Shown here: positions 22,462 to 63,550 of the stretch, piece after piece
Numbering within the stretch: position 1 is the first letter of the stretch
Layout: every line of letters starts with the position of its first letter
Assembly (NCBI GenBank): GCA_977030845.1
Contig: OZ365115.1
Span: forward strand, 34,720,001-34,784,000
Length of the DNA: 64,000 nucleotides
Reading direction: 5' to 3'
From: Fimbriosthenelais zetlandica
Taxonomy: Eukaryota
The notes under the pieces: model-generated
The model's database searches: none
What the model was told of the DNA's origin: nothing
Seen by the model: the letters and a program-made list of their open reading frames with translations, nothing else
Program-made: the position numbers and the translations under genes

Positions 22462-22525
22462 TTTATTCTGGTTTGGATGATTATTCTGGTTTGGATGTTT
22501 ATCCTGGTTTGGATGTTTATTTTCG
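22462..22525. repeat. 18-bp tandem repeat x3
   Basis: TTATTCTGGTTTGGATG(A/T) units. Confidence 0.8.
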
Positions 22526-26619: not shown

Positions 26620-26760
26620 TTTGAGATCCCAGGTTCAATTATCCAAGTACTTGCCATTGTCCTTCTTCACCCAGTGCTGCTAACTGGGATACCAAAGGCT
26701 CGCCACTGCCCGTGGTGAGAGTCATGTAAAGGGTCAGCCATGTCTCCCACAGTCTACCAA
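26620..26760 (+). mobile_element. tRNA-derived SINE family copy
   Basis: GAGATCCCAGGTTCAAT (B-box-like) precedes TTGCCATTGTCCTTCTTCACCCAGTGCTGCTAACTGGGATACCAAAGGC. Confidence 0.72.
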
Positions 26761-42829: not shown

Positions 42830-43000
42830 CCCCACCACTAGCATCCCCTCTCACCCCCCCCCCCCCCACCACTAACACCCCCTCTCATATCCCCCCCCCC
42901 GCCACTAACACCCCCTCTCATACCTCCCCCCCCCCCCCCACCACTAACACCCCCTCTCATACCCCCCCCCCGCCACTAACACCCCCTCTCATACCCCATA
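42830..43000. repeat. C-rich ~33-36-bp tandem repeat x5
   Basis: The unit is Cn-(A/G)CCACTAACACCCCCTCTCATA. Confidence 0.85.
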
Positions 43001-43954
43001 CGACACCTGTAAACACCTTACATTTGTATACCTGTCCTACCTGCCCCGTTAATCCTGTCCAGGTGGGACTCTCAGCTCAGGTAAAAGACCATCAAGGGGT
43101 TTACCTCCCCCCTACCTCCCCCCCTACCTCCCCCCTACAGGTGTTAGACCATCTTCAACACTGACACCCTCTCAACATGCTTTGTTGTCTCACTAGGAGC
43201 ACACATGAAGGTTCTTTACACAACAAGCTTTTCTTTTCCATTCTTGCTTTCTTAATCCTAGAAAATACTCTTGATTTCTTAGTAAGAGTGTAGGAAGGTT
43301 TGTGAAAGCAGTATGGGGCATAGTTTGTTTACAGAATTATTTGTATTTGGGGACAAAAATTGATTCATTTTTGTCAAAAGTTGGGGAACCCCTGCCCCCC
43401 TTCACACACCATTTCATCCTATTGTTGTTGCATACCAAAACAAAGGCATTTATTAGTATTGGCTAAGTATCTTTACCTATATCAATCTTATTTCCACATG
43501 CAGCGCCACTGATTCCCCACAAATCATTCAACAAAGTTGTTTTGACGAACATATAACAACATAACGGAACATATCACCTTAATAAAAACCTTTTTACTTG
43601 GTCGTTGCGTCTAGACGCATGTTTTGGGATGCTTCCCTTGTCTTGGACTTGTGTTAATTTCAATCCAAACCACACACGGGGTATTTGGTCATTACTGTGG
43701 CGTCTCCCTCCACCTACCGTTAGTCTAGCCACTTGTAAATGTACATTACGTAACACCTCATCTATACACCCCTCAACCTTACCTTTACCCCCCGCCACCT
43801 GGTCCAGCCAGGTATATGTTACCTGTACCTCTCAATGACTACTTACCACACCTGTAATTGAAGGATTTACCTGTGTATCATGGGGTATAGAGGTATAGGG
43901 GTGGGGCTGGGGCTCAGGTGCGAGGTGGGGCCATATACCCATCACAGGCTGTTT

Positions 43955-44065
43955 GACTTGGGAGATCCCGAGTTTATTTCTTCTCAACAATTCCCCAATT
44001 TGACTGCATTGCCCAATTTAATTTGAGTCTTTTCCTTTCAATTGCTGCTAACTGAGATATCAATT
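43955..44065 (+). mobile_element. Highly degenerate SINE family copy
   Basis: A GGGAGATCCCGAGTT head remnant and a GCTGCTAACTGAGATATCAA core remnant are present. Confidence 0.45.
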
Positions 44066-44657
44066 AATGACAAGCCTTGTCTTACTATACCTACATTGAG
44101 AGTCATGTATACATTCCTGAAATTACTGCAGACCTTGGTAGAGTATGGCGGAAATATGGGAGAAATTATCTCTACATTGTATTAATCTATAGTAATTTTA
44201 GCAATATATTGTATTATCAGCAGAGAAGGACAAATTTGATCAGCCTTTTGATTGAAGATCTAACGACCCATAAGTAACTTGTCCATCCATTGGTTAAAGT
44301 ATCTAAGCACATGTTGTTAGAACGTTTGCAAAAGAGCTGAAATCTGGGATAAAATGTCGTTTTTCCAGGTTTTTGAACCTGTTCACCTTCTCGCTGTATT
44401 GCCCTACTCGTCCCTGGCCGTCTCTTTATGTGGGGGCCTGGGGACAGACAACAGACCAATGGTGCGCGCCCCAGTCTCTCACTTCATTTAACACAATATT
44501 CTGTCTCCTCGAGTCATCTCTCTACCCATCCCTTATACCGAGAGGTGGATGAGGTGGGCTAGTCAATGTTAGAGGACGGGGGAGAGGGGGCAGGGGCAGA
44601 AGGGCACAGGGCAAGGGCCAGGGGGGTGCAATGGATCTTAAGGGTTTACATGTCTCT

Positions 44658-44892
44658 CCCCACAGATAGTGGGAGGCATGGCTGACCTTTACAAGCCTCT
44701 CACCACAGATAGTGGAAGACATGACTGGCCTTTTACAAGCCTCTTACCACAGACAGTGGGAGACATGGCTGGCCTTTTACAAGCCTCTTACCACAGACAG
44801 TGGGAGACATGGCTGGCCTTTTACAAGCCCCTTACCACAGACAGTGGAAGACATGGCTGGCCTTTTACAAGCCTCTCCCCACAGACAGTAGG
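44658..44892 (-). repeat. 44-bp minisatellite (about 5.3 copies) derived from the SINE core
   Basis: The unit is TACCACAGACAGTGGGAGACATGGCTGGCCTTTTACAAGCCTCT. Its reverse complement matches the SINE segment AAAGGCCAGTCATGTCTCCCACTGTCTGTGG-GAGAGGCATGTA. Confidence 0.85.
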
Positions 44893-47800
44893 CCTATAGG
44901 GCAACATGCCTGGCTTTTTATTAACCATTTACCATCCCTCGCCACCGATAATGTCCTTTCCCTCGTTATCCCTGGGACCGCAATACGAGCCATTGTGACA
45001 GCGCTTAGAGGAGGTTTTGACTCCTATTTAAGTGCATTACACTCTGATGTCTTTATTAGTGTCTGCAGGGACAGGGGGTGTCAATCTGTGACAGGAGAGA
45101 TGTGATTTTATTGTCAAGCCTCACAATAGGAGGCCCCGTGCCCCCTGCAGCCCTATAGCACATCAGCATATTGTCAGAGTGTGACTCTATGTCCGCCCCC
45201 TCTACTCATCTCCATTTATAGGCCTATCTGTACACTATGGAGCCCCCAGAATAGTCTTGCTAAGGTCCTTTTAACTATTGTGTTTAGTCTCTGCAGTTCA
45301 CACCACCAATAATAAAAGTGATGTGTGTAGTTCACTTCGGTTTCACTGCTTATGAATCTTTAAGTTTATTATCCTATTAAAGGCCAGCTGCTATTGCAGT
45401 TGTTCCGAGTGTGTAGCTGCATTATACCACAGGATTGCAAGGCATTTTATTAGAAGGAAATTGCAATGAAAAGTTGCCAGAATAGCAAGACAAACATCTC
45501 AATTTGAATTGAGGAGGACCTGGGCTAGTCTAGCTTGTTAGCAGACACCTCAGTAAGGTGATGTCTTGGTTCATATTTTAGTTTCTATAAGATGACAAAA
45601 GGTCGCCCCACCACCGTCACGCCCCCTAACGGCTTCCACGACTACTGGAATGTGCTCCTTGCCCTTCATTTTGGGCGTTTTTTAAAAGATTTCATTTTAT
45701 TGGGATATTTCTTCTCTGACCCTCCTTTCAATCTGAAGGGACGATTTCATTAGCCTACATAAACATCTTGATGCCAAGTTAATTCGGAGCGATTTTAATT
45801 TTAGACTTTATTGGGTTTGATGCGGATGCAGCTGGGAAGAAAGGAGAAAATAAATGAAGATCGTCGAGTGACAAGGATGGAAAGGTTTCATTAAGAGGTG
45901 TAAGGGCTTTAAGTGGTTTACAGTGAAGACGGATGAATCCCAGGAGAGATGGGGGAGAGTGGAGTGAAGCTCATTCACTGTTATCTTGTCATTGTCCGCG
46001 TCGTCATGACGATATCGCCTTAACGACGTCGTCAAGGTGACCAAACAAGCCTCGTTTCCACGGCCAATTGGTCCTGGTCAAGACAGCGTGCGCTCAGTTA
46101 GTGGCGGACAAAGTGGACACTTGACCGGAAACTAGGATGTCTGTCCATCTCCAATTGTCGGGCTAGTCTGGCGTGGACATTCTCGTAGAATCTCGTAGAA
46201 TCTCGGGGAGAGAAGGAGGCCAGGTGTTTCCTGTGTAAGGTGCTGAGTCATTGTACTCGGGAAGATCTCGCTGAATCTCGTCCGGATCTCGCCCCCGGCG
46301 CGAGATGAGACGCGGGACTTGGCTGTTTCCTCTCGTGGATTCACGTACTGTCTCGTTTATTGGCGAGGTTACAGCTCCCTGTCGTCTTTTTTGTCCCCTC
46401 ACTTCCTCTCTTCGCTGACTTGCAGCCAAATCTTTCACCCTGAAACGTTTAACCCATTTCCTGCTTTTCCAATAAATGAGCATTCTTCTTTTATAATAGG
46501 CCTAAATCTGGTCTGAAATCCCACCGTATATTGTTCTGGAGAGCTTTATGAATCTCCAGTAGGATTCCTTCAGTTTCCATTTAGATTTGTGTGAGTGCAT
46601 TTACCATAATGTCATAGGGATTATATAATTGCATTACAAACAGTAACAAATTGTCTACTCCATTAGTCAGAATAATCCCTGATATCTCGGTGATAATTGC
46701 CCTCATACCAAATGACATCTTCACGATGTTCCCTACAACCTGCAAATTACCTAATAATTACAGAAGGGATACCTAAATGTGTTCTCAGGAATTGAACAAA
46801 ATCCAAAACAACAACAAGTTGTTGGTCAGGGGCTTCCGTGGGTGGTGGCATGGGTCATTCACAGCGACATGTCAACTCTAAACCCCCACACAATCATTAG
46901 AGGGCAATTTAACCCGGGAATTGTCTCTACAATTATCTATCTATGTTTGCTTAACAACAATTGTACGCTACTTCTGTGTCAGGTTATTTTGATTGGGGAT
47001 TAAGTAAGGGCCATTTGTGGTCGATAGTGTGAAAACAGTTAATATTTACGACCTCGGAAAACTGGATAATGAATAGAAAACCCCCATATAACGGATGCTA
47101 ACCGGACTTAACTATTGTGTAAAGTTATGGAATTTGTTGTAATTGGCAAGGGGTCTTAGATTTATAAGCCGAGGCTTACACTGAAATTCAGATAAAAGAA
47201 TAAGATGTTATCAATAAGTTAGGGGTGGCAATAGAGTATATTTCCTATTGTGATTTGCAATCGACTTCCTGGAATTCTCATGATAAAAATTAGTTTGCAT
47301 TACAAGGATTTGTATCCTATATAATAGGATGATGTAAATAAATTGATGTTCAAATTCCTATAGATAAAATCAAATTCTATGATTTCATGAATTTAGCACC
47401 CATTCAGCAGATTAGCAGCTGTCTTACAACCTTAGATAATTAAGAAAAAGAAAATAAAATGACCCAGGACAAACTTGATCTTTTTTGGGTCCTTCTTTTG
47501 ACCTTCAAAATCTTAAGACGCTTGATGCGTCTATCCAAGAGGGATTCCTTTCTCTTTTTGTCTGGATCTTTTATATCAGAATCTATTTTAGTTGTGTTTT
47601 TCTGTTAGAACCTTCAGGTGGATTACCACAGTAGGTTTTCTCTTTAAATACAGGTGCAAAAGGCCTTTGTTGTGTCCACTCTTCACTCTCCTTCAATCCT
47701 TAAGTTTGTTTCCGCTTGACCGACCCTCTTAGCTTTCTCTCCCGTCCATGCATGAAATGAACATACTAGATACAGGCTAATTGACACAGCCGGGGTGGGT

Positions 47801-50076
47801 TAATTAGGGCTGTTCTAATTGTGACTGTTTGTATGGGTGTTAGATGGATGGAGGTATAATGAATGTATAGCCTCCTGTAGGTGTTATATACACATTATAT
47901 GGACGACCTCCCTGCTGTCACACTGTCACATATCGTGTTATTATAGCGTCAAATGGTGACTGTATACAATCAATGATTGACAGACAGCGCATCATTACCG
48001 CGGATCATAGGTGATAATCACAGACAATCAATGTTAACGCATTATTCATTATCCTTACAAAATGTCTTAAACCATCTTTAATTCTTTAAAACAATACTTT
48101 AAGAACATTTTATGCAAGCGGCTTGCCCAAAGAGGCAAGAGGCATGCCTAAACGAAAAAAAATTGTCCATATTCCCAGCTCAAAGATAGTTCAATTCGAA
48201 ATTGTTGCAAATGAATACCTTTCAATGCGAGAGACAAATGAGTATTCTTGTTACTTGAGAGGAAATGAGTACTATTAGAGAGGCAATAGAGTATAGTTAT
48301 GGAGAGAATTCAGATTTGTTCATAGATATTGTGTTATCTTTCGGGATAAAATCAAGGATAGTAGAGTTACTAGGATATTGTAAATCCTTGATTTATAGAG
48401 TATCCTTGATAAAATCCCAATTAATACATTGTCTTCTTACTATATCCCTTGATCAGCCAGTTTTTTTTTAATATGACAGTTCTCCTTTGAAAAAAAATTC
48501 TAAATCTGAACAAATGAAATCAAAGTTGGCCCCCTGTGGGGAGGATTTGTGAAGAACGTTGAGGGAGGTCTTGTACTGTTTTCTCATCCACGCGTCTCAG
48601 ACGCATGCTAATCATGTTCATGACGTCATCACATGTTAATACCCATGTTAACTAAAGTCTGGTGTCAGAAATAGACACCTATATAACACCCACCTCTATT
48701 GTTCGGATTAAGACCACAAAAGAGGGATGAGCCGATGTTAGCTTTCATCTAATGCCATGAACAGCTTCCCTGGTTCTAAAAACGGGTCCTAGATTTACCT
48801 TGTTGCTCGGAATCTTTCATATTGAAGCTAAACTTTAATCCCAACATCTATATTGGTAAAAGAAGAGTATTTCCATAGATTTGGAAAAAGAAAAGTATAT
48901 TATTTATTAGAAACAAATAGATATTTAATTGAAGCAAGTTCCCAGATATTACTCTGAAATATTAATAAACTCTTCCTTGCTGTTCCTCATTTGTCGTCAC
49001 CTTCATTTTCAACACCTGGTTTTGAGCTGAGCCCAGCCTACCTATACATGTAGAAGTCATACAGAATTTTTAATAACCCGTTCCCGTGTATACATGTTTT
49101 CTCGGTACCCACACACATTATAATAAATATGATTAGACTGGGCCAGGCTTTCTGCCTTGCTTCACTCCGTCAATAACATCTATACAATATGAGAACTACA
49201 TTCCTCAAATGAGCTTTGAATATTGAATGAATGGACCATCTGCCAGTCCGGCATGTGTAGGGCATTTAGTCCTCATGGCGGAGAGCCCCTTCAACTAGCC
49301 AACCTAGAGAAGGGAGTCACTGAGACAGAGAGAGGAGAAAGACAGAGAGATAGAGACATAGACAGAGAGAGAAGGATAGGGAGAGACAGTGACAACGCGA
49401 CGTCAGGGAAGGGCAGACAGAAAGACAGAGAGACGTATAAGACATGCAGAAATAGAGACAGAAAGAGGGTGAGACTGAGTCTCAGACTCCATGGGACAGG
49501 GAGAGACGGAGATAGACAGATACACGTAGATAGATAGACAGAAAGAAACGAGAAGAGAGTGGTTGAGAAATAATGTAAATACACAGATAGAGAGCAGGAG
49601 AGAGAGAAACTGAGAGAGGAAAGAGAGAAACTTTGACATACTATTAGGAGAGAAACTGACAGAGAGGAGTGAAAAGGGAGGGGGAGATAAGAAGAGAGAG
49701 AGAGAGGGGGCATGTGTGGAGGGTACATTATGGGATGGCATTATGTTTGTACAGATGGCCCTCACATGTTTGCATGTTACTTCATTTCACGTGGAAGTAA
49801 CAAGTAGAGAATATGTCACTTGTAAATACTCTCCCCACCCTCCTCCACACCCCCCCCCCCCCGGCCTTCCTCCTCCCTCTCCCCCTCTGCCTTTCTCCTC
49901 GCCCTCCGCCTCATCATAGACGTAGATAGATGGACCGCCAACTCTGAAGTCTCGCGCATTGACTTCAATGCAAATAACGCCGGCCACGAGAAGCCGCGAG
50001 AAACAGGATAGTTGACTTCCGGTTACATTCTCACACGCTTGTGGGTGTGGTTGTACTCTGCTATTTTGTCGTAAAT

Positions 50077-51800
50077 ATGGATTACAATGAATTCAATGAT
50101 GTGTTAGAGGTAAGTTTCCACTTATTTATTTGATATCCAACCAGGGTAAGACAAACAGAGAAGTTGTTATATGATTTAATCGTATTTATGTGAGGTAAAT
50201 GCCGGCGAAGTTGCCGGGTCACGGACCTGTCTGCCACTAGTGTCAGGCCCACTGCCGCTGTCAGAGAGGGACACAGTTCCCAGCCCGTTCTAGTGTCTCG
50301 TCTAGCCCCTACTCAGGCTACTATAGGCTAGATAAAATATTCATCCCCTGGGTCCCCGACAGGACAGGGAGCCGATCATATTGTCTAAACTGTAGGCTTG
50401 TATTTGTACATCAAAATGTAAGCCTAGTCCTAGGCCCCTCCTTGCTTCGGGAATTGTGGTTGATAACGCTTCCAATGAAAAAAGGTTTCCCCATGTCTGA
50501 TGTAGGGGCTAATTTTTTTTTAAATGGTCAGGATTCTGAGGAAAATGCTATAATTCAAGTAGCTTAGGCCTGCATAGGCCTAGTCAGTTCGTGTAGGTAG
50601 GCTAGCCTCAATTGTATTATAAAGCATTAAAGGACCTAAATTATGGAATCATCTCCCAAATTATTTACGGGAAATAAAATCTCTCTATTCATCAAATAAA
50701 ACATTTCTTTATGTAACTTAAATCAACAATTAATACCGTAATAAGTGATAATGTTTCAACATATTCTAATATAATAATATATATCAATTAATGTTCAAAC
50801 CTCATGTTCTGTAAAAAGTCCCTGTATATGTAAAGGGAACATATAAGCCCTTCGAGGTTTCTGTTCTTATATAAATTTTATTTTTGTCATTTCCAACCTG
50901 TTAATTGTTACTTTGTTATTTTGAATAAAAAAATAAAAAATTCCGGGGGGGGGGGGGGGGGGGGTGGTAGGCTAATTTCAATCAGGCCATAGATAGGCTA
51001 GGCCTAACGCTATTATTAGGCTTAGTCCTATGCATAACCATCTGTATTGTAATACACTTGGCATTACATTTACTTTATCGGCCATAGATAATAGTTCTCT
51101 ATCATCTATACATAACCCATGCCATAGTTATAGCCATAGTCTAGGACGATATGGCCTATTATAGGTGTTTCTGCCACCACGTCTGATGATGTGCCTCGCT
51201 TTGAAATATATTAAAATGTTAGGCCCAATGATTTGATTTCCACGGCATTCCATTGTCACCCAAAAAATTTCTGTGTTGATTGCCAGTAACCTAACTGTTT
51301 GTAATTAACAATTTTAGGTCCTCACGGCAGGCCTACATGATTATAATCACTGAAACACAAGGCCAAGGTCTAGCAAAATGACGGTGAGTAAATGACATTT
51401 GGATAATTACAAAAATAGTGTCAAGTTGTAAGGTCCGCGGGGACCTACAGAATTTCTTAATTTAATATATATGGATACCCGTAATATTACTGCAAATACA
51501 TTAGTTCAATTTAACTATTTTAAGATCTTAAGGTTAAACTAGACTGCTGTTATATTGTTCATGAAAATATACAGTGAATGTTCATATTATTACGGATATA
51601 TGTAGTATTAATATTTCTTATTTTCATGATACAGAAGGATGGACTAGCATTGGATTCCACATTGGATAAACGAGTGCTAAACACCGGGTATTGGCAGTTG
51701 TGCCTGTGTCCAAGGATGAATATAATTCGAGTAGGCTAGAAAAATTCTTAGAAGATGTCAAAATAAGAGATCAATTGTTACTGTTTTTACTGTGTTGATT
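50077..51800 (+). pseudogene. Degenerate spliced gene remnant inside the P-like element
   Basis: Exon-like pieces: 50077-50109 (ATG...GAG|GTAAGT, MDYNEFNDVLE); 51318-51383 (ttttAG...ACG|GTGAGT, 66 nt, VLTAGLHDYNH*NTRPRSSKMT with one in-frame stop); and a piece from 51635 (ttttcatgatacAG|, KDGLALDSTLDKRVLNT then, after a frameshift, VLAVVPVSKDEYNSSRLEKFLEDVKIRDQ). The phases are compatible (0/0). The product was not recognised. Confidence 0.45.
50821..50942 (+). mobile_element. Possible truncated 3' tail of a non-LTR (L2/CR1-like) retroelement
   Basis: A small stem-loop (GAACATATAAGCCC-TTCG-AGGTTTCTGTTC) is followed by a T-rich stretch and an AATAAAAAAATAAAAAA tail. No ORF or TSD is visible. 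Confidence 0.3.
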
Positions 51801-52831
51801 AAACTAGTAACTTTGATATATGTATCAGTTACAAATATTGAATATTTTTAGAATATCATTGTTTTATCACTTTGTCTTTGCGTACCGTACCTTGGCGCAT
51901 ATGATATATGAAGTTATTTTTTTTATTTATAGGCCTATTTTTTTAAATTTAACAATGAATTCGTCTGTGATATGAACATTTTCTGACAGATAATAAAACA
52001 TATAATGAAAAAATGGATAGCTTATAATTATTTCTTCACTTGAAGGGGCCGATCATAAAGGCTAGGCTAGAATATGCCTGAAAATCCTTGCTATGAATGT
52101 TTTGTATTATTAGGCCTATAGTACAGTACGTACTAATATAGTAACACTTATTATAGACAAATACCGGTAATTATTTAATATTTAAGTAGGAACATGGTGG
52201 TAGAAAAACCTAAAGGCTCTAGACCAGGTTTTTTCAGTAGGCCTACGGTACCGGTAGGCTTATCCTAGGACTAGGCTTCTTTAAATTTAGCTTAAATCAC
52301 CACCCCTGGAATAAGGGCTAGCCTAGGCCGCGAATATAGGCCTATATATAGCCTCGATTCGAAAAATGGCTTTAGGCCGCCTGGAGATTCAATTTCAGAC
52401 GAAGATACCGGTAGGCCTACCTTACTGGTACTTTCTTCATTGCCTTGTAAGTTGTAGGCCTAGCCCCATCCCAGGCCTAGCGGAAATATTTATAGAGTTC
52501 ACACTGGTTCAAACATCTGCTTGGATTAAGGCCGAGGCTATACCCGGTAGGCCGTAGGCTAGGCTTATAACCTATCGAGCTATAGGCCTACATATTCAGG
52601 CCCAAGGGCTAGGCAGACATGGTTTTAGTTTCGGCAACACTTTTTCAGAGGCATCAGAACTGATGAGGCCTGACAGAGTTGTTATGAAAGATAATATCCA
52701 GCATACCGGTACCAATTAAAATCTGAGGATTGAAGTAAAGATCTTCAGGATAACACAAGTAAATACTATCACCGACTAGGCCCTGATGTTGTTACACGGC
52801 CTAGCGGTAGGCTTACTGCTGTAGCCTAGGC

Positions 52832-52884
52832 CATAGATAATAGTAGAACTACTATTATCTATAGTAGAACTACTATTATCTATG
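52832..52884. mobile_element. Nested 53-bp palindromic mini-element with CATAG...CTATG ends and a 7-bp TSD
   Basis: The sequence is CATAGATAATAGTAG-AA-CTACTATTATCTATG (15-bp perfect inverted repeat) with an internal 21-bp tandem duplication. It is flanked by CCTAGGC at 52825-52831 and 52885-52891. Confidence 0.78.
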
Positions 52885-52974
52885 CCTAGGCCTAAAGTCT
52901 GAATGTAGGCATAGTCAGTGACCGTGCATGTCAGTGACAGTGTAGACGGCTGTAGCCAGTGACACTCGCCTTAC

Positions 52975-53091
52975 TCCTATATTTACCAAAGATTCAAGGC
53001 GTTTCCGCAATGATAATGCTTCCGCAATGAATTCCTTGGACGTCTTTACCCCGGAGCACCATTGAAATTGTAATTCTAACAATTATATCAT
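52975..53091 (-). pseudogene. Possible degenerate first exon of a second, convergent gene in the P-like element
   Basis: The minus-strand reading MI*LLELQFQWCSGVKTSKEFIAEALSLRKRLESLVNIG (39 codons, one stop) starts about 60 nt inside the right TIR block and ends at a phase-0 GGA|GTAAGG donor. No homology was recognised. Confidence 0.28.
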
Positions 53092-54922
53092 TGTTTTTAT
53101 GGACCATCGTCCAGACACTCCCGCTTCGCAAAGCTAGTCAGCTGGCAGCCGGAAGTCAACTATCCTGTTTACAGGCCGCGCATGCGTGCCGCGCGCTCGA
53201 GGGAGTTGGCGGTCCATCTATCTACGTCTATGGCCTCATTGAGTCAGTTGCATTTATTAAAAAATACATTCTTTCTTCTAAATGGACTATTTTTGGAATT
53301 GGTGCACCAGATCTGACACAAATTGTCAGAGCCGACAGATGAGGAAACGGTCAGGAATATTGACTTTGATTTGAACTGACTATAATAGGTCTGTGTTATG
53401 CATCTGATAAAGCTTGCTTTGTAACTTCGTTATATTGTTTTTTTTAAATTGGCGCTGAACATATGCGCTATTGATATCAAAATAAAATCTAACTAAAGTG
53501 TTATAAAATAATTATACTTATACTTGAAGAAATAGGACTAGGGATGGACTCATTTCTGCATTCCCTATCATTTTAATAAAATCTTCCTGAAATGCCCCTA
53601 ACTTTTAAAAGTCCTGTATATTCCCTCTAGTAGGCCTATATTCTATACTCACGTTAAGTCAGATACATACAACCCTCAATATCATTCAGCGTCAAATTTA
53701 TTAGCAAAAACTCACATGGAAGTCTATTCTTTTATGTCAATGTTTATGAGAATTCCTGTAACAAATTGCACTGAGTAAACTGCCTAACCCCACACTATCG
53801 ACCTTAGAAAGAAAAGCTCCCCGGTGAAGAATATATCCCGTGTGTTTTACACATCAAGGTAATAAATTATGGAATAATCATGGTCTCTCATATGGTGTTG
53901 TCATCAAGCTGGTTTGTATGAAAAGACAATGTAATCATTGGTACAATTTGTACCAGGGTGATGTGACATCACTCCACAGGTCTGATGGTGGCTGGTGCTT
54001 TATAACTCCCACTTGTCCAGGCTATTTCCATGCTATAATGGACACAGTATGTCATTCCTCATACATTAATATGTATTATTCCACGGAATTTCATGCTTTG
54101 TTGCATCCGCCATATCATATGCCCATCATTGAGAAAGACCTGTTTCTACAATATGCTTTATGATTTTTTTTTAATGAATACAAATTGGAACCGTAATATT
54201 TATATTGCAATAAATCATATACTTAGAATCGATGGGTGGTAGTAGGCCTAAACCTTTTTTTATCTATTTTCATGGTTTTCACCTTCGTTGGGATATGTGT
54301 ATTCTATAGCCTACAAAGACCACTATAATTATTTAAAGAGAATTTAGTAAGTTGTTATGAATGATACTAAGTCCATTTAAAGAAACAGAAGCCCCCTTTA
54401 AGATATCAGGCGGCTCGTGACTCCATGACACCTGTCACACACGTTTGTGACGTCTGTCAAACGTCGAGTTGCTATGGTGACGAGTGACGTCCCTGAACGT
54501 CATGGTACGTCTCGCTGCCAGCTTCATTCGATCAGGTTCAACTCTCTACCCCCAAACATATTATTCTAATTTTATCTGGATATTATATAATGGAAAATAT
54601 TAAAATCTGACGGTAAAATTGATCAGTTTTCTTCATTAATCATACTAAGACAATATTCTTGGGGGACGCTCATCAAAAGCTTGAAGAAATATTTCTGATA
54701 TTGTTATTATGTTTAAATATATACTAAATTAAAGTCCTGGGCAAGTTTAATCGTGTCTGTCTCCACCTGATCATGGAAACAAACATCTTCCCTGCTATGT
54801 TCAGTACACATTTCCCCTGTCCTCTGACAAGCAGGTCCTTTGTTTATATTTTAATGTCATTCAATGAAACTCCATCAAGATCCACGCTGGGCCACCATAA
54901 CGGCTTACCTTACACTGACATT

Positions 54923-55207
54923 CCTATACATTTAACATTGGTTCTCCCCTATTATCGCCCTATACATTTAACATTGCTTCTCCCCTATTATCGCCCTATA
55001 GTTTAAAATTGCTTCTCCCCTCTTATCGCCCTATAGTTTAACATTGCTTCTCCCCTATTATCGCCCTATACGTTAAAATTGCTTCTCCCCTCTTATCGCC
55101 CTATAGTTTAACATTGCTTCTCCCCTATTATCGCCCTATACTTTAACATTGCTTTTCCCCTATTATCGCCCTATATGTTTAACATCGGTTCTCCCCTATT
55201 ATCGCCC
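54923..55207. repeat. 35-36-bp minisatellite, 8 copies
   Basis: The unit is CCTATAGTTTAACATTGCTTCTCCCCTATTATCGC. The copies are contiguous with no spacers, so this is not CRISPR. Confidence 0.92.
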
Positions 55208-56559
55208 AGTAGGATCTCATTGTTTTCATCATTTATGTCCAACGGTTTAGGCTTAAATACTGACTTTAAATGATATTGTAGAGACTGACTTCTTTCCTTT
55301 GCCCATGACACCACCGTGAGTAAGATTTCATCCCACTAGAAAGCAGGAGAACTAGTCCTGAAATCATATTTCTCCCTAACTGATATAAGTAAGGAAGGTC
55401 AAAGATTGTTGAAGTTAGATTTCTTTAAAGGGAGAGTTTATTAGTGAAGCATGTTTTGAGAACCTGTGCTATAAGCCTAATTATAGTGAAAGCAGTGATG
55501 ACACATACAAGCTGTAGTTTACACTGATTGAGAAATTAACCATGAGAGAATCACATTTTCCTGTCACAACTACAGACGCCCGCCTGTACTAATGATAGCT
55601 GTCACCAGTCCACGCCTCTTCTCGCTATATCTGACAGTCCCCTGTCACCCCACCACCCTCCCCCCACCCCCACCCCCCGTCACAACTCTCCTATCACGTC
55701 TCTCCATCCATCAACACCTCCTCCTCCCACCTCTCGTCCCACATCTCGCCACTGCGAGACACGGCGAGAATCAATCTCATCTGGAGATTGCTGATTGGTC
55801 CATCCCTTTTGATGCTCACGTCATGACGTATGACGTTTTGATGACGTGTGGGATGACGTCGTGGCGTTGTGGGAGTTGTGAGGGCTGGTGATCAGATCAG
55901 ACATGTTGCTGTTTTTCTCAGACACTCCTCTTGCTATAAGACGGTCCCTGGGGAGGTGAAGGGGCAGGGACTGATCAAAGATTCTGTAAAGGTGTTGGGG
56001 CAAAGGGGGGGGGGGGTCATCGGTATTGTGGGCGTGGAGGGGCAAGAAAGGGTTGGCCATCAGTTGTGTGGACAAAAGTGAGAGTCATAATATGTCTTTT
56101 CCCTTTGCTTTTTGTCCCTGAGACCCTTAAATCATTGTCTGTTCAGAACAAGCTACCTGTGACCCAAGTCATATTATGCTTCAAGTTAAAATTTTGTAAA
56201 GCTTGTACTGATGTTTTATTAATAAGATTTAAATCTTATGGACTCTCAAGTCCACCTTCCCCACCCCTCCCCAGCATCTCAGCACCCCCCCCCCCCCTCC
56301 CCCTCACATCTCCCCTTCGCCCGATCTCATCTTAGATTCAAAGATGGCGACGTGTAGCGGTCGTCTTGGTAGCAGTGGGCGTGACCTTGGCGGTCTCTGA
56401 GATGGCGGGGTATTGAGGGTGATATGAAGACCATATAAACCTGGCGTCCTCTGGGATCAGCCGTATAGATATGACCCGAGGCCTGTCTGTGGCCTGTGAC
56501 ATGGATAGGGAGGGTCCAGTAGCAATGTCCACCTCCTGGTCATCTCTCATATGTCATCC

Positions 56560-56905
56560 GCCATGTTGACCTTGACCCCGCCATCATGATGACCTTGACC
56601 TCCCCGCTCTGCCACCTCGCTTCACTTCCCGTCCCTCCGCCTCATTTACCCTCACTACTTCCCCGCTTTTCCCTCCTCATTCCCAATCTCACCTCCCGCC
56701 TTTTAGTGATCTCCCATGGGGGATCAGGTCAAAGGTCAACTGGGATTAAGGTCAGAGGTCAGGAGATCAATTCGGCGATGGACACTGAGCGCCATGATTG
56801 ACAGGCGGCGACATGTTTTAATTCGGCTATGGTTGCTATGGTTACCCCGCCATGGTAACGATGGTGATGATGATACATGATGGGTTGATGGTGACCATGG
56901 TTACA
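56560..56905. promoter_or_regulatory. Enhancer-like module: two perfect nuclear-receptor DR1 elements, DR0-like pairs and three RFX X-box-like sites
   Basis: AGGTCAAAGGTCA 56726-56738; AGGTCAGAGGTCA 56749-56761; GTTGCTATGGTTAC 56832; CCATGGTAAC 56850; GTGACCATGGTTAC 56891. Confidence 0.5.
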
Positions 56906-59900
56906 TGACCATCAACTGGACGTCCAGGAGGGGAAGTGACCCACATAGAGACCATGGTATAATGATGATGGCCAGAGATGACCATTCTGCTACATTTCTC
57001 CCACTAAATGACCAATCTGTGTCTGCTCCCAGCGGTCAATCTCACTTACTGACCATGCCATCTATATAGCTACTGATTTAGCTCCACTATTCTCTATGTA
57101 TTGTTATGTTTATGATTATTTTACTGATTTTATTGTCAATTCATTCAGTCACTTCGTAACTCATTGATTCATTCATTCGTCTCTCTTCTCAGCCATTTGC
57201 TCACTGAGTTTCTCAACCAACCATTTGCTCCTTCAGTAACTCACTCACATACTCACTTACACACCAGCTGTGTAGGCCAATATGTATACACACCCTCAAC
57301 TATTAAAAATATATAATATTTACTCAAACATTCCTCAATTGTAAATCACGAGTATAATACTTCCTGAAACTATTTATAATATGATAAATCCAATATTTAC
57401 CAAAGTTGAAGTTTGTGTATCTTTTAACATATCAAATATCACATGATAAGTTTAGATATTGTTGATCAAACTCCATTGTCTCCATTGTCTTCTCTCCTCA
57501 TGATATTGTTCTAGAATCTTCATGGTGTTTTAGAAGCTTTATGATATTGTTCTAGAAGGTTCGTGAGAATCTCAGATTGTTACCATGGTGACGACAGATT
57601 GATTATAAAGTCATGCATCACGTGACACCCAGATAACAACCCTGACAAATAGGATGATGTAAGCCAAACGCCCGCCACCTATCTCTTCTTGTTGATATAT
57701 GACTTCAGTTATGTATAAACATTTGTCATTTTCTCCCCATCCGCCGATAAAAAACGCTCTGGTCCAGTCATCAATGCCGTTAGCAGCAAACAAGCCCCCT
57801 TCTGATTTAGTTTTTGTTGGAGAGTCTTTGTTGTAATTTATTATGAATCAATTCTCACGTTCCTAGGGGAACTTGTCTGTCATCCCAAGCAGGCTGGTGG
57901 TAGAAGTTAGTATTATAGATACATAACTCTCTCTCTCCCTCAATCTCTCCCTTCTCTCCCTCTCTCTTTCTTTGTCTCACTTTCGATCTCATTCTCTCCC
58001 TCTCCTTTCTCTCCTTTCTATCTATCTCTCTCTCTCTCTCTCCCTCTCCCTCTCCCTCTCCCTCTCCCTCTCCTTTCTCGTTTTCTCTGTCTCTCTCTCC
58101 TTTCTCATTCTCTCTAAATCCTCTTCGCCTTGTTTGCTGTCTTCCTCTACAATTGCTGGATATCTCATTATCTAGTCTGGCTTCTATACAAATTCCCTTG
58201 TCTTTAGAACATGGAATATGTCAAACAATTCATATTAATGGTTTTAATGTCGCCCTGCCAAAGCATTTTTCTTTAGATCCCCCATATGAATGACAATGTA
58301 TTAGACATCGTTATAGTAGATATCAAAAAAGATGAAAATGTGCAATATGATAGCCCTCTGTCTGACTACCGGTAACCATTGTGTGCCAGCAGCAGGGGGC
58401 CAGCGAGTCGTCTTTTTAGGCGAGCAACTAAATGAAAACATTTGTATAAGAATAGATAGAGTTACTGGGAGCATGTGGTAAAGCAATGTGGTTGATCATC
58501 ATTGTTTTAACCCGGTACCTGGGGCGTGAAACTAACTCGCCAACTTTATACCTAAATACATCAAGAAATCCTGCTTAAAAAGGCCTGAAACTGTAGACTA
58601 ACTCACCAACTTTATACCTAAATACATCAGGAAAATCCTACTTAAAAAGGTTTTCCTCTGGAGGCCTAGTATACTGCAATGGGTATAATGGTTATCATGT
58701 AACCTTGGCAGCTGAAAATATCTCAGCTTTTGGATGAAAAACTGCCTTGAAAAATGTCCTTCAAGTCTGTTTGACAAGGGAATGGGTTGTAACCCCCTTC
58801 CCATACCCAGCCCCCCTTGCTGGATCCACAACTGGACAGCTTGACCATGTACTGACCATGATTGTCTCCTCTCGCCTTATTCCATTCAATTTGTTATATT
58901 GATGTCAATTTGGTCAAATCTGTCCCCCTCTCTGACACTGACCACTTGGTCTGGTCACTCTGGCCGGCTGTGGGGGGACGCTCGAGGTCAGAGGTCATCA
59001 ATTTGGCATTTCATCCATCCGGCCATCTGAGGCCTGATTATTGACATGTCATTCAGACGGTGAAAAATGCATGTGGCATTACGATTTATAATCCTTATGG
59101 GGTTTCTCCCATTGCCTTCCCATTCTTGCAACTTTTCATTGCAATTTTCTTCATATGGCATGTGATGGGAGGTCTCTAACTTATTGCAGTAGTAGATCTC
59201 CACTCTCGCAACAACTCAAGCAGTGAAACCCCAAGTGCAGCCGCAGCAAGTGCCGCAAGAACATTGCAATCAAAATGAAGGCAATTCAGCAAGCACCTTT
59301 TAGCGATTTCACTTTTTTACCAGAGTAATTTTTAGCTTCATCACATATGTCCATTCCTTCAATCACTTTCACAGTTCAGTCAGAGAGAATTTGGCAACGA
59401 GTTTAAGGCTTGCTGCGTCATGATTATGATTTCTGAGGTCAGGACCAAAAATCAAATTCCTGTAAATGAAATCCACCCAACATGCCCCCTCTGATCCCAT
59501 AACCCATAATGCAATGCGGTGATGACCTTTATGCACTGAGCAATAAGGCCCCCCGCAGAGGTACTACACAAATATACATAATATTTGCATATTGAATATT
59601 CTTACGCAGCCCACTGCAAGAACAGCCATGTCAGGTCAAATGAAACTAGAAACTGGTCGCTTTTAGTCAATGGCTGATCCAGACGGGTGGGGGGATTTGG
59701 GGATTGCAAGATAAGACTGGACAGTACTTGCCCAATATATAGGACATCTGGTATAGCCTATAGGGAAGGAATCGCTGGACTGAATTTCTGAAAAGACTGG
59801 ACTGAATCTCTATATCTGAGGTGTGATTTGAGGAACATTGACATGGGTGTGACAGCCATCTTGTCAACCATGACTTGACACCTGCTCAGCAGAGCAGAGG

Positions 59901-61959
59901 GGAGATGTCAAGAACGCTGGACCCTACGACCCATCACCCAAACTAAGAGGCAAACTGGGGCATATATACAGGCTCTATTCCCTGACCAGAATCGATTTGG
60001 CCAAATTTGACCAATTGACAGATTTGGCCAAATTGACAAACTCCACTCGCAAGTACTTCGATTTGTCACTGTGATTTCCAACCTCAAGGTGATAGGCTCC
60101 TTGCCTGCTCTCAAAATATGCAAGGCTCACTTGCGATTCTCGCAACTTTTCATTGCAATTCACTTGCAGTACGTACGGTTGATATTATTATGGTCCAGCT
60201 CCTGGGCTTTCACTGTTTTTCACTACAGTTTCTATATCTTATCCTGAGCCATCAATAAACTATGCTTAAGAAATTGAATGTCAACTTGGTCCACTCCCCC
60301 ATGTCTCCCCTTCCCCTCCAGTCCACCATCCCCCTCCCCCACCCCCTAATCCCCTAATCCCTTCCCGCATACCCCTCTGAACACGCCACCCAATACCATC
60401 AATACAATATTTCCATCGCATACATGCTGCTTTGCGGTTACTTTCAGTTTCCTTTTACTCATGTCCCGGCCATTATCGATCTTTCTTTAAGTGTAGGATT
60501 TTTCTAACCGCGGAACTCATGAAGGCATGAAAGGTAGGGTGCGGAACAACAGTCTTGTGCATCGTTGTTCAATCTGATATTGAACCAAAACAAAGTGCGT
60601 CAAGGAGAGATTGTCAATAAGTGTTGGCCGTGGAGAGGGGAGGGGTGACATTGTCCTGGCCAACATGTGGGAGTGGAGGATCCAGTTTTCAGCCACCCTG
60701 GTTGATGGTGGGGTGTTGAGGTGTGAAAGACCGTTCTGGATCAGTGGATCCGCATATCAGACTTAACCCAAGCGTGCTGGTCCTCTTAATGGCATCTCTC
60801 TCCCCTGGGAGACGGGGGGAGACCGGGGTGTAGGGCTCTCTCCCCGCCCCTCCTGCCCCCTCATCCCGGGATGGGGAGCTGCTCGCCCCGGGGACCTGAG
60901 CTTGAGCCACTCCCTCTGTCCTGGGTTGCTCCTTCTGTCTTGGACCTCTAGATGGGAAGGACATGGAGGGAGGAGGGATGGATACGGAAGGGATGGAGCA
61001 GGAGCTGGAAGGGAAGAGTCACCGGTACAGGGAGAATAGGATGAGGGATGCATGGGGAGAGAGCAGGAAGGGAAGAGGAGCCAGAAGAGGGAGAATGGGG
61101 AGGGGATGGGAGAAGGGAGGGAGCAGGAGCATTGGGGATGTGGTAGAGAACAGAATAAAGCATGGTCAAGATTAAAACATTGTCGTCGAAGAGAGAGAGA
61201 GAGAGAGAGAGAGTGATTGGAGAGAGAGAGGAGAGTGCAGAGAGAGGGAGCGAAAAGGTACAGGCAGAAACCCTATGAAGGGTAGGCTATAGGCTAGACC
61301 TTACTCGCTATACAGTATCTACTATAGCTATGAGAGGACCAGCTCTATCACAGCCATGTATGGGAGCTACTACTACACCAACCCTACCCTCCTCCTCCAG
61401 TCTCAGTGTTGCTCTCTCTGCTCAGTTTGGTCTTTAATGAGTAGCTCATACAGGGCTCCTATATAACTGCTGGTTCAGGGGCTTCTCCTCTTCTGTTTCA
61501 TATCTACAATAATATTGAAGTACAGGGCATTTGTCTCTGGTATATAAGCCAATGGTATTAAATATGCCAATGCCATCAAGCCATTGCCAATACAATCAAG
61601 CAAATAATGTTCAAAGGCCCTTATATCTTTCAAATGATACAAATCTACGAGTTACTCAAATTAGGTCAATTTCTTTGATATCTGTCAGAAAAACCATTGC
61701 TAAAGATAATGTGTTTAAAGTATAGAGGTTCAACACTTTAACCTATGGTTCTGCAATGAGACATCATTTAAACAATGCAACAGTCATTGCGCCAATGTTT
61801 AAAACCGTGTTAAATTCATTAAAGGTTTAGATATTGGGAAATTTAGGTTGGAAATAACATAGTTGAGATGCAACATACTTCAATACCGTTGTAAAACCTT
61901 GGGTTTTATCAAAGATAGTTTCTACTGTGGGAGGCCTGTACACTATACTGTGGGTGATT

Positions 61960-62900
61960 ATCTTAATATGTCCCGCCCGTACCACTATACATGTACCAGA
62001 GATTGTGAGGATAAAACATTCTAGTTTCTGCCCCCGCCGATGGTGGCGCTCTGAGCTGGTGAGAGGAAACGCTGTGAGTAGAGCAGGGACCCAGGAGGGA
62101 GGCTGGAGGAAGGCAGAGAGAGGGCGGGGACCCGGAGATAGATAGAAAGAACGTAGGAAATCACGACACTAACAAAACATTAGAAAAGATACAATTTGTA
62201 GCGGAGACCCTGGAACGTGTTGACAATATAGGAGGAGTTCTGTACCGTGAAAAAGGGGAATTATGGACGGAGATATTTCTCAATAAGGAGGACGTAACGA
62301 GTGGGATATGGCTTTGTAATTGAAACAAGAACCGGATTTTGAAAGTGATTGGTGGACGCTGCACGGGACCATAAACATTGTGATGACCTGTGCTGGTTGA
62401 CCTCTTGTGACGTCACCATTGAGCAGACGCTGATTTTTAAGATTTGGCGCCAGGAAGCTTTCATCAGGACTCATTGTAATATAACGAGAGTAAGATAGGG
62501 ACCTGATGATACAAACCCACATATAACTTTCCTCGTTCAACTACAGCCGTCCTATTGTTGAGACAGTTGGTGGAAACATTACCTCATGTTACCCATGACT
62601 TTGTCTTGTGTTTTTATTTGTTTGAGAGATAACATGTGGCACCCTGGGACGTCTATCGCCCATTTGATGACGTTTACTCCGAATAAAATGTAAATAACAA
62701 TCAGAGGACGTGAAGTCTCGTACGGGACGAGACTGTGGACGAGATGTGACGTTATCTTATCTTGTCTGCCTTTCCGGGGGAAGGTTACATTTTTGTCGTC
62801 AAAACAAGACATTGTGAGGCGATATTTTACCGAGGGTTTACTCAAAATACGCCGCCAGCTCGTGTATGGGTGATGTGGGCAATCTGACCTTCTGACCTTA
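61960..62900 (+). promoter_or_regulatory. CpG-rich putative internal promoter/alternative first exon region
   Basis: GC boxes (CCCGCCC about 61972; GGGCGGGG about 62122), a CCAAT box (ATTGG 62348), a perfect CRE (62408-62415), a donor candidate AGA|GTAAGA (62490), a DR2 (62885-62898) and the EVI1 site lie immediately upstream of the 135-nt exon. Confidence 0.45.
62752..62766 (-). promoter_or_regulatory. Perfect EVI1/MECOM ZF1-7 consensus site GACAAGATAAGATAA
   Basis: The plus strand reads TTATCTTATCTTGTC, a 15/15 match to the established consensus GA(C/T)AAGA(T/C)AAGATAA, 650 nt upstream of the PR exon. Confidence 0.6.
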
Positions 62901-63124
62901 GATTATCCGGGCCGACTCAATTGTTGTCTGAAGCTCATGTTGGTTGATCCCACCATAAAGAATGTGGCCTTATCATCTCAATGTGTGTCTCAATTTTACA
63001 CTTTATTATTCTCATTATTTGATAAATTAATGTGTACAGTACTCACAGAAAGTTAGGAATAATAATTATGGAGAAATGACAATAAATTTACCTATTCCCC
63101 AAATATGAAATTTGCAACTGACAA

Positions 63125-63270
63125 CTTAGTACTCTTGTATTTAGAGAGGCAATTGAGAATCGTAGCATTTTGAGAGGCAATTGTCTACTCTAGTAATTTG
63201 AGAAGCAAATGAATACTCTAGTAATTGGGAGAGGCAATTGAGTACTCTAGCAATAGAGATAGAATATTTG
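63125..63270. repeat. Degenerate ~28-bp tandem repeat (TTGAGAGGCAATTGAGTACTCTAGTAAT), with related patches at about 31030-31085 (minus) and 48215-48300
   Basis: About 4-5 diverged units are visible; shared GAGAGGCAA and GAGTACTCTAG words occur at the other sites. Confidence 0.65.
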
Positions 63271-63415
63271 AATTTCTTCAATAGAAACTATATAAGCTTT
63301 CTTGCATTGTATCCCTAAATTTAGCGTAATTCAAGATCCAAAAATGTATTCTACTTCATTTCTAATTATAGGCCTAGATTAATCAAACTCAAATATTTCT
63401 CTGTTCACCTTTCAG

Positions 63416-63550
63416 CTGGTTGATAGTTACGGGAAGGTGAAGGGATGGATCGACGCCAGTGAACCCGGAACCGGAAACTGGATGAAGTATGTGCGCAGTA
63501 CGTCAGATCCACGTCATCAGAACGTCATGGCGCTCCAGACGGACGACCAG
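63416..63550 (+). CDS. PRDM3/16: Internal coding exon (45 codons, LVDSYGKVKGWIDASEPGTGNWMKYVRSTSDPRHQNVMALQTDDQ) of a PRDM3/16-family PR/SET-domain zinc-finger transcription factor gene
   Basis: The acceptor is ctctgttcacctttcAG (ends 63415) and the donor is CAG|GTAAGA (63551). The exon is 135 nt, phase 0-0 and stop-free. The peptide has the PR-domain motif IDAS-x5-NWMKYVR-x7-QN-x3-Q and aligns without gaps to the recalled 45-aa exons of MECOM (ILDEFYNVKFCIDASQPDVGSWLKYIR...CQINDQ) and PRDM16. The supplied ORF 63437-63706 is this exon read through into the intron. Confidence 0.9.

What the first reader, a model, noticed from the sequence alone, without database searches (positions are those of the whole stretch)
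62752..62766. Perfect 15-bp EVI1-family binding site inside the EVI1-family gene: autoregulation signature
Seen: GACAAGATAAGATAA (minus strand), plus a 13/15 site at 39253-39267. Established: GA(C/T)AAGA(T/C)AAGATAA is the consensus of the EVI1 N-terminal zinc-finger domain. The rough chance of a perfect match in 64 kb on both strands is of order 1e-3. Inference: the gene product binds its own putative internal promoter, a feedback loop that could set the long/short isoform ratio. The zinc-finger exons are outside the window, so conserved specificity is assumed.
Basis: partly seen in the sequence, partly recalled or inferred. Interest (0 to 1): 0.8.

Follow-up and report, generated by a model that had tools for sequence, protein, structure and literature searches.

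The report
EVI1-type sites in PRDM3/16 gene
A perfect match to the DNA sequence bound by the mammalian EVI1 zinc-finger protein lies in a big intron of this invertebrate's own EVI1-family gene, with a second perfect match 83 kb upstream, which makes self-regulation of the gene a reasonable but untested idea of a kind already known in this family.

Summary
GACAAGATAAGATAA is at 62752-62766 (minus strand), in single-copy DNA, 650 bp upstream of a PR-domain exon (63416-63550) of a PRDM3/16 (MECOM/PRDM16-like) gene on the plus strand. The 13/15 site at 39253 is at chance level.

- **The protein could read the site.** The zinc-finger exons lie 42 kb beyond the window. Fingers 4-7 keep 15 of 16 canonical base-contacting residues of vertebrate MECOM and PRDM16.
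- **The site is not alone.** The genome (447 Mb) has only 14 non-microsatellite perfect matches. Two lie in this locus; the scan had already noted the second, 20.7 kb before the window (s1-191829). Over 148.7 kb, matches with 0, up to 1 and up to 2 mismatches number 2, 3 and 10, against 0.00, 0.09 and 2.19 in Markov simulations. The core GACAAGATAA occurs 5 times against 0.59 expected.
- **Plain GATA hexamers are not enriched,** nor are the ETS-like or C-terminal-finger motifs.
- **What is missing.** Binding, expression, an internal promoter and conservation could not be shown. No RNA run was listed and no close relative was available.

In mammals most EVI1 ChIP-seq peaks carry an ETS-like motif, not this 15-mer. 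Self-regulation of the family is already documented for C. elegans egl-43. My verdict is a plausible autoregulatory site (about 0.4), a new member of a known kind, of modest interest.

The parts
62752..62766 (-). Perfect 15-mer GACAAGATAAGATAA, the consensus of the EVI1 N-terminal zinc-finger domain. It lies 650 bp upstream of PR exon E_b.
   Evidence: The flank is single copy. It is one of 14 non-microsatellite perfect matches in 447 Mb.
45981..45991 (-). Core match TGACAAGATAA (11-mer) inside the 78-kb intron. It is one of 5 GACAAGATAA cores in the 148.7-kb locus.
   Evidence: The 10-mer occurs 5 times against 0.59 expected.
39253..39267 (+). It is at chance level.
   Evidence: 2 matches with up to 2 mismatches against a mean of 1.0; 26 of 100 shuffles reach that.
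63416..63550 (+). PR/SET-domain exon E_b of the PRDM3/16 gene: 135 nt, phase 0, acceptor tttcag, donor gtaaga. It contains the conserved in-frame ATG at 63482, where predicted short isoforms of other invertebrates begin.
61900..63100 (.). CpG-undepleted patch that holds the site: CpG observed/expected 0.77-1.0 against a window mean of 0.53. It is a candidate cis-regulatory module or internal promoter. This is inferred, not shown.
   Evidence: The 400-bp windows that hold the site (o/e 0.96-1.0) are in the top 5% of 400-bp windows.
1..63415 (+). The part of the 77.9-kb intron between PR exons E_a (C25:34705209-34705496, before the window) and E_b that lies in the window.

Best explanation
The 15-mer is probably a functional binding site for the N-terminal zinc-finger cluster (fingers 4-7) of the protein this gene itself encodes. 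It would be one of a small set of such sites spread over the 5' two thirds of the PRDM3/16 locus, so that the product feeds back on its own transcription.

Shown:
- The site and a second perfect 15-mer (C25:34699319, 5.9 kb upstream of exon E_a) exist in unique DNA.
- The composite motif is enriched in the locus well beyond local composition and beyond the genome-wide rate.
- The DNA-reading residues of fingers 4-7 are essentially those of vertebrate MECOM and PRDM16.

Inferred:
- The local protein binds this sequence.
- The 62.5-62.9 kb patch is a regulatory module or promoter for a PR-truncated isoform starting at the ATG in exon E_b.
- Binding changes transcription. The sign of the feedback is unknown. 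In mammals the long form activates and the short form represses through this consensus (reviewed in PMC7564095).
For: 1. Exact match, unique in the window, about 1e-3 expected.
2. Genome-wide there are 14 non-microsatellite perfect matches, against 15 for the reversed-pattern control. Two of the 14 fall in this one locus, 83.4 kb apart. The Poisson probability of 2 or more in 148.7 kb at the genome rate is 1.1e-5.
3. In the contiguous 148.7-kb locus, matches with 0, up to 1 and up to 2 mismatches number 2, 3 and 10. Order-3 Markov simulations give 0.00, 0.09 and 2.19, and none of 200 simulations reaches the observed count in any class. Locus-trained Markov models of order 1-5 expect 0.0013-0.0018 perfect 15-mers.
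4. The core GACAAGATAA occurs 5 times. The mean of same-composition words is 0.59 (empirical P 0.0024) and the genome rate gives 0.55. TGACAAGATAA occurs twice against 0.14.
5. The enrichment is specific to the composite motif. Single GATA hexamers, the ETS-like AGGAAG and the C-terminal-finger consensus GAAGATGAG are not enriched.
6. Contact residues of fingers 4-7 are 15/16 identical to vertebrate MECOM and PRDM16, and those of fingers 8-10 are 12/12 identical.
7. Both perfect sites sit in single-copy DNA.
8. The site lies in a CpG-rich patch next to other high-information motifs.
9. There is a precedent in the family: C. elegans EGL-43 regulates egl-43, and ChIP-seq shows it enriched at its own locus (PMC7117773).
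10. There is weak cross-species support. The Haliotis orthologous locus has 3 cores against 0.41 expected (P 0.012). Eight non-own orthologous loci pooled have 5 against 1.3 (P 0.01-0.03).
Against: - There are no binding or expression data of any kind; no sequencing run was listed.
- None of the eight orthologous loci examined has a perfect 15-mer. Babylonia, Asterias, Priapulus and Plakobranchus have no core site at all.
- The intron flanks do not align to the relatives available, so conservation of the site is unknown.
- The consensus comes from in-vitro selection with mouse EVI1. In mouse leukaemic cells 88% of ChIP-seq peaks carry an ETS-like motif instead (PMC3694976).
- The local protein lacks fingers 2 and 3 and has one contact change in finger 7, so its optimum site may differ.
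- Both perfect matches are one transition away from the common (GATAA)3 microsatellite, and the motif contains GATA sites that other factors read.
- The second perfect site lies in CpG-poor DNA with no other mark of a regulatory element.
- Five of the 13 independent non-microsatellite sites lie on contig C25, which hints at an uneven background rate. Even the C25 rate leaves P at about 1e-4 by my own arithmetic.
Confidence: 0.4

Rival explanations
1. The sites are non-functional sequence: chance matches, including relics or near-variants of the abundant (GATAA)n pentanucleotide microsatellite. They happen to fall in the EVI1-family gene and were picked out by a reader who was looking for exactly this motif.
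For: - 153 of the 167 genome-wide matches to the degenerate consensus are (GATAA)3. Each perfect site differs from it by a single T to C change.
- The genome-wide count of non-microsatellite matches (14) is no higher than the reversed-pattern control (15), so the motif is not selected for genome-wide.
- The scan examines very many windows, and the motif was chosen after the gene was recognised.
- The 13/15 site is at chance level.
- No perfect site occurs in the eight orthologous loci.
- Five of 13 independent sites lie on C25, so the rate may be locally raised.
Against: - Two perfect matches in one 148.7-kb locus have P of about 1e-5 at the genome rate and about 1e-6 under locus-trained Markov models.
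- Near matches and the 10-mer core are enriched as well, and none of 200 simulations reaches the observed counts.
- Neither perfect site has flanking GATAA units, and no tandem array covers the window site.
- Both sit in unique DNA.
Confidence: 0.3
2. The sites are functional but are read by another factor, most plausibly a GATA-family factor using the tandem AGATAA units, perhaps in competition with the gene's own product. The gene would then be a GATA target rather than self-regulated.
For: - The 15-mer contains two overlapping WGATAR sites. The upstream perfect site has a third GATAAG 20 nt further 5'.
- The N-terminal EVI1 consensus is described as GATA-like, and EVI1 and MDS1/EVI1 modulate GATA-1-dependent transcription (PMC7564095, PMC10553128).
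- The window site sits in a patch with other factor-like motifs, such as a perfect direct repeat of AGGTCA spaced by 2. That fits a multi-factor enhancer.
Against: - Plain GATA hexamers are not enriched in the locus: AGATAA 170 against 146, TGATAA 146 against 116.
- The enrichment is carried by the composite GACAAGATAA, whose GACAA half is not a GATA site: 5 against 0.59. The double-GATA word GATAAGATAA is only 3 against 0.86.
Confidence: 0.25

Closest known systems
C. elegans egl-43 (EVI1/MECOM orthologue) positive autoregulation
   Same: The gene family is the same. egl-43 also has a long form and a short form made from an intronic start site. Its product regulates its own gene, and ChIP-seq shows EGL-43 enriched at the egl-43 locus (PMC7117773).
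   Different: There the loop rests on RNAi, reporters and ChIP-seq; here there is sequence only. What I read of that paper did not attribute the loop to the 15-mer GATA-like consensus. The animal here is a different phylum: the best protein matches are brachiopod and mollusc orthologues.
Mammalian EVI1 N-terminal zinc-finger consensus GA(C/T)AAGA(T/C)AAGATAA (Delwel et al. 1993; Perkins et al. 1991 core TGACAAGATAA; cited in PMC7564095 and PMC10553128)
   Same: The window site and the upstream site are exact matches. The local protein's fingers 4-7 carry 15 of 16 of the same canonical contact residues.
   Different: The consensus was defined in vitro with mouse protein. Mammalian ChIP-seq peaks are dominated by an ETS-like motif (PMC3694976). 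The local protein has 5, not 7, N-terminal fingers.
MECOM two-promoter architecture (MDS1-EVI1 long form and EVI1 short form from an internal promoter)
   Same: A very large intron splits the PR domain. The exon after it (E_b) aligns to the middle of the MECOM PR domain. Predicted short isoforms of Lingula, Asterias, Babylonia and sea urchins start in or just before the equivalent exon.
   Different: No transcript evidence exists for this genome. The exon-for-exon equivalence with human EVI1 exon 2 rests on my recollection of the human junction, not on a test. The invertebrate short forms would keep half of the PR domain, whereas vertebrate EVI1 starts just before finger 1 (P0155).

Membership tests
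PRDM3/PRDM16 (MECOM/EVI1) gene family | N-terminal PR/SET domain | tested here: met
   Pfam PRDM2_PR matches the exon at 63422-63553 (35.2 bits, above the cut-off). The best PDB match is the MECOM PR domain, E 2.2e-6, then PRDM16. Further PR exons are at C25:34705209-34705496 and 34794709-34794816.
PRDM3/PRDM16 (MECOM/EVI1) gene family | N-terminal cluster of seven C2H2 fingers | tested here: not met
   Five fingers were found (equivalents of 1, 4, 5, 6 and 7). No candidate for fingers 2 or 3 lies between the finger-1 and finger-4 exons. Lingula PRDM16 shows the same five, and Haliotis has six, so this is a lineage variant of the family rather than an exclusion.
PRDM3/PRDM16 (MECOM/EVI1) gene family | Fingers 4-7 with the family's recognition helices | tested here: met
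   The contact residues are D-S-N-R, T-S-G-Q, Q-S-N-R and T-T-S-K. Shark MECOM and bat PRDM16 have D-S-N-R, T-S-G-Q, Q-S-N-R and T-S-S-K, so 15 of 16 are identical.
PRDM3/PRDM16 (MECOM/EVI1) gene family | CtBP-binding PLDLS-type motifs and a C-terminal cluster of three fingers | tested here: met
   PFDLS and PLDLS motifs and three C-terminal fingers are present, with 12 of 12 contact residues identical to the vertebrate proteins.
EVI1 N-terminal-finger binding site | Match to GA(C/T)AAGA(T/C)AAGATAA | tested here: met
   15/15 at 62752-62766 (-) and 15/15 at C25:34699319-34699333 (+).
EVI1 N-terminal-finger binding site | Bound by the protein in vitro or in vivo | not testable with these tools
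   No DNA-binding assay is available here, and no sequencing run was listed for this genome.
Transcription-factor autoregulatory loop | Sites for the factor in its own locus, beyond chance | tested here: met
   Matches with 0, up to 1 and up to 2 mismatches number 2, 3 and 10, against 0.00, 0.09 and 2.19 simulated. P is 1.1e-5 at the genome rate. The core 10-mer occurs 5 times against 0.59.
Transcription-factor autoregulatory loop | Sites conserved in orthologous loci | tested here: inconclusive
   Only the exon aligns to the relatives available, at 72-79% nucleotide identity. No perfect 15-mer occurs in eight orthologous loci. Core sites are 3 against 0.41 in Haliotis, 5 against 1.3 pooled, and none in four species.
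Transcription-factor autoregulatory loop | The gene's expression depends on its own product | not testable with these tools
   This needs a knock-down or site mutation with a transcript read-out.

The most novel reading that the evidence does not exclude
The N-terminal-finger sites mark an ancient bilaterian PRDM3/16 feedback circuit placed at the internal promoter for the PR-less or PR-truncated isoform. The long and short products would compete at the same sites, activating or repressing, and so set their own ratio. This logic would be shared by lophotrochozoans, nematodes (egl-43) and vertebrates (MECOM).
Probability: 0.1. Interest if true: 0.55.

Novelty: new member of a known kind. Interest (0 to 1): 0.3.

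Why it matters
If the sites are bound, two things follow. First, the DNA specificity of EVI1 fingers 4-7, defined in vitro in mouse, would be conserved to a lophotrochozoan-like invertebrate and used in vivo. Second, self-regulation of the PRDM3/16 gene, so far documented in C. elegans, would be a wider feature of the family. That bears on how the balance between the PR-containing form and the PR-less, oncogenic-type form is controlled. It is a hypothesis from sequence statistics in a non-model animal, and autoregulation of developmental transcription factors is common, so the gain is incremental.

Tried and rejected
- **Expression or start-site evidence.** Two searches for public sequencing runs listed none.
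- **Conservation.** I fetched the equivalent exon with flanks from four other assemblies, and whole orthologous loci from Haliotis, Babylonia, Asterias, S. purpuratus and Priapulus. Only the exon aligns. The Ptychodera locus was too long to be served, and three proteins were not on record.
- **Bipartite EVI1 element of Morishita 1995** (the 15-mer, then 1-28 nt, then CTCATCTTC). Reading the minus strand by eye, the best match downstream of the window site is CACATCTCG, 6 of 9 at spacing 3. By my own arithmetic that is expected in roughly a quarter of cases, so I rejected it.
- **C-terminal-finger consensus GAAGATGAG:** 3 against 2.5 expected. **ETS-like AGGAAG:** 130 against 165. Neither is enriched.
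- **General GATA-site richness as the cause:** rejected.
- **Repeat or transposon origin of either perfect site:** rejected, both are single copy.
- **Exon 1 of the gene:** not found in the 25 kb upstream of E_a. Whether the upstream site is intronic or 5' of the gene is therefore open.
- **Mammalian EVI1 autoregulation in the paper library:** the search found nothing usable. The Delwel 1993 paper itself is not held.

Full report
**Observation.** The + strand at 62752-62766 reads TTATCTTATCTTGTC, which is GACAAGATAAGATAA on the minus strand. It is the only exact match in the window to GAYAAGAYAAGATAA. None of 100 dinucleotide shuffles produced a match. The site at 39253-39267 is 13/15 as stated, but matches at that level are at chance: 2 observed against 1.0 expected, and 26 of 100 shuffles reach 2. 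No tandem array covers the perfect site. The 401 bp around it occur once in the genome. The consensus itself is correctly quoted: reviews give GA(C/T)AAGA(T/C)AAGATAA for the first finger domain and GAAGATGAG for the second (PMC7564095; reference list of PMC10553128).

**The gene.**
- The window is G000:C25:34720001-34784000 in a 447-Mb assembly.
- A 135-nt phase-0 exon at 63416-63550 (+), with acceptor tttcag and donor gtaaga, matches Pfam PRDM2_PR.
- Among solved structures its best match is the MECOM PR domain, then PRDM16.
- Among 1.8 billion representative proteins it matches PRDM16/MECOM-like proteins of Plakobranchus, Lingula, Ptychodera, Batillaria, sea urchins and Priapulus.
- I mapped the gene with the Lingula, Haliotis, Babylonia and Ptychodera proteins:

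| Exon | C25 coordinates | Content |
|---|---|---|
| E_a | 34705209-34705496 | N-terminal half of the PR domain; has an acceptor, so it is not exon 1 |
| E_b | 34783416-34783550 (window 63416-63550) | middle of the PR domain |
| E_c | 34794709-34794816 | C-terminal part of the PR domain |
| E_d | 34800955-34801083 | finger 1 |
| E_e | 34826341-34826511 | fingers 4-5 |
| E_f | from 34826731 | fingers 6-7, PFDLS and PLDLS motifs, fingers 8-10 |

- The site therefore lies 650 bp upstream of E_b, at the 3' end of a 77.9-kb intron that splits the PR domain.
- The species was not determined. The protein is closest to brachiopod and mollusc orthologues.

**Can the product read the site?** I extracted the fingers and their canonical contact positions (-1, +2, +3, +6).

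| Finger | This genome | Shark MECOM (P0155) and bat PRDM16 (P0167) |
|---|---|---|
| 4 | D-S-N-R | D-S-N-R |
| 5 | T-S-G-Q | T-S-G-Q |
| 6 | Q-S-N-R | Q-S-N-R |
| 7 | T-T-S-K | T-S-S-K |

The single difference, S to T, is shared by the Lingula, Haliotis and Ptychodera proteins. Fingers 8-10 are 12 of 12 identical. Fingers 2 and 3 are absent. The title of Delwel et al. 1993 says that four of the seven fingers are required for binding the 15-mer. So conserved specificity is plausible, but it is inferred.

**Is the site more than chance?**
- Genome-wide the degenerate consensus has 167 matches, and 153 of them are (GATAA)3 microsatellite.
- The non-microsatellite forms number 7 (GACAAGATAAGATAA) plus 7 (GAYAAGACAAGATAA). 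The reversed-pattern controls number 10 plus 5. The motif is therefore not enriched genome-wide.
- Two of the 14 lie in this locus. The second, GATAAGACAAGATAA at C25:34699319-34699333 (+), was a lead from an earlier scan note (s1-191829). I confirmed it. It is also single copy.
- I assembled C25:34680001-34828700, 148.7 kb. Matches with 0, up to 1 and up to 2 mismatches number 2, 3 and 10. Order-3 Markov simulations give means of 0.00, 0.09 and 2.19, and none of 200 simulations reaches any observed count.
- At the genome rate, P(2 or more perfect sites) is 1.1e-5. Markov models of order 1-5 trained on the locus expect 0.0013-0.0018.
- The core GACAAGATAA occurs 5 times, at C25:34699324+, 34708550+, 34765981- (window 45981), 34782757- and 34801992+. 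Same-composition words average 0.59 (empirical P 0.0024). The genome rate gives 0.55, from 1660 copies against a control of 1695.
- The enrichment belongs to the composite motif. AGATAA, TGATAA, AGGAAG and GAAGATGAG are at expectation.
- One caveat: five of the 13 independent non-microsatellite sites lie on C25, which is 8.5% of the genome. Using the C25 rate still gives P of about 1e-4 by my own arithmetic.

**Context of the site.**
- The stretch 61.9-63.1 kb has CpG observed/expected of 0.77-1.0 against a window mean of 0.53. The 400-bp windows that hold the site (0.96-1.0) are in the top 5%.
- Next to the 15-mer are three copies of GGACG(A/T)GA and an 8-bp perfect palindrome.
- A perfect AGGTCA-GA-AGGTCA direct repeat lies at 62885-62898. 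That pattern has 539 copies genome-wide.
- This looks like a dense regulatory module. That is an inference.
- The upstream perfect site lies in CpG-poor DNA.

**Internal promoter.** No RNA run was listed for this genome. The comparative evidence is as follows:
- Lingula isoform X3, Asterias amurensis MECOM-like and the Babylonia protein begin at the conserved Met of the equivalent exon (MKYVRS...). That ATG is at 63482 here.
- Sea-urchin models begin in that exon or splice an alternative first exon to it.

These are gene predictions. They make a start site upstream of E_b plausible but do not show one here.

**Conservation.**
- The nearest available sequences share only 72-79% nucleotide identity in the exon, and nothing aligns outside it.
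- In eight orthologous loci (365 kb) there is no perfect 15-mer.
- The core occurs 3 times in Haliotis (0.41 expected, P 0.012), once in an unnamed contig, once in S. purpuratus, and not at all in Babylonia, Asterias, Priapulus or Plakobranchus. Pooled, that is 5 against 1.3 (Poisson P 0.011, permutation P 0.026).
- This is weak support at best.

**Literature.**
- EGL-43, the C. elegans orthologue, regulates itself and is enriched at its own locus in ChIP-seq. Its short isoform starts in an intron of the long one (PMC7117773).
- In Drosophila, long PR-containing and short Ham isoforms exist, and the DNA specificity of the finger domains is described as undetermined (PMC12227202).
- In mouse leukaemic cells 88% of EVI1 peaks carry AGGAAG, so the in-vitro 15-mer is not the dominant mode in vivo (PMC3694976).
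- Both MDS1/EVI1 and EVI1 bind the first consensus, with opposite effects on a reporter (PMC7564095).
- I found no paper showing mammalian EVI1 autoregulation through this site.

| Reading | Probability |
|---|---|
| Sites are read by the gene's own product | about 0.4 |
| Another factor reads them (GATA-type) | about 0.25 |
| They are non-functional | about 0.3 |

The narrower claim, that this site at an internal promoter sets the isoform ratio, is speculative (about 0.1-0.2). Autoregulation of this family is already known in nematodes, and autoregulation of developmental regulators is common. This is therefore a new member of a known kind, of modest interest.

Noticed in passing
window 62885-62898 (-): A perfect direct repeat AGGTCA-GA-AGGTCA (nuclear-receptor half-sites spaced by 2), made by an 8-bp tandem duplication TCTGACCT x2. 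It lies 120 bp from the 15-mer, in the same CpG-rich patch. The pattern has 539 copies genome-wide against 100 for the reversed control, many of them in repeats.
   Followed up: partly
window 62706-62748: Three copies of GGACG(A/T)GA and an 8-bp perfect palindrome (AGTCTCGT / ACGAGACT, 5-nt loop) lie immediately beside the 15-mer. Their meaning is unknown.
   Followed up: no
C25:34700754-34700778 (L050:754-778): A short tandem array of GATAAGACGA units gives one 1-mismatch and one 2-mismatch hit to the consensus, 1.4 kb downstream of the upstream perfect site.
   Followed up: no
genome-wide: Five of the 13 independent non-microsatellite perfect 15-mers lie on contig C25, which is 8.5% of the genome (binomial P about 0.003 by my arithmetic). 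This is unexplained.
   Followed up: no
C25:34801084-34826340: This PRDM3/16 gene has no exons for fingers 2 and 3. Its N-terminal cluster has five fingers, like Lingula PRDM16. Haliotis and Ptychodera keep finger 3.
   Followed up: partly
L046:12202-12287 and 13402-13487 (Plakobranchus ocellatus): The E_b-equivalent exon is present twice, 1.2 kb apart, and the deposited 207-aa protein model repeats it. This is either a local duplication or an assembly artefact in that genome.
   Followed up: no
window 45981-45993 and L008:9324-9336: Two of the core sites share a 13-mer, GACAAGATAACAG, which extends the shared core by 3 nt beyond the 10-mer.
   Followed up: no
L056:71085-73776 (Priapulus): A second PRDM-type gene (PR domain plus C2H2 fingers) lies tail-to-tail about 7 kb from the Priapulus PRDM16-like gene.
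   Followed up: no
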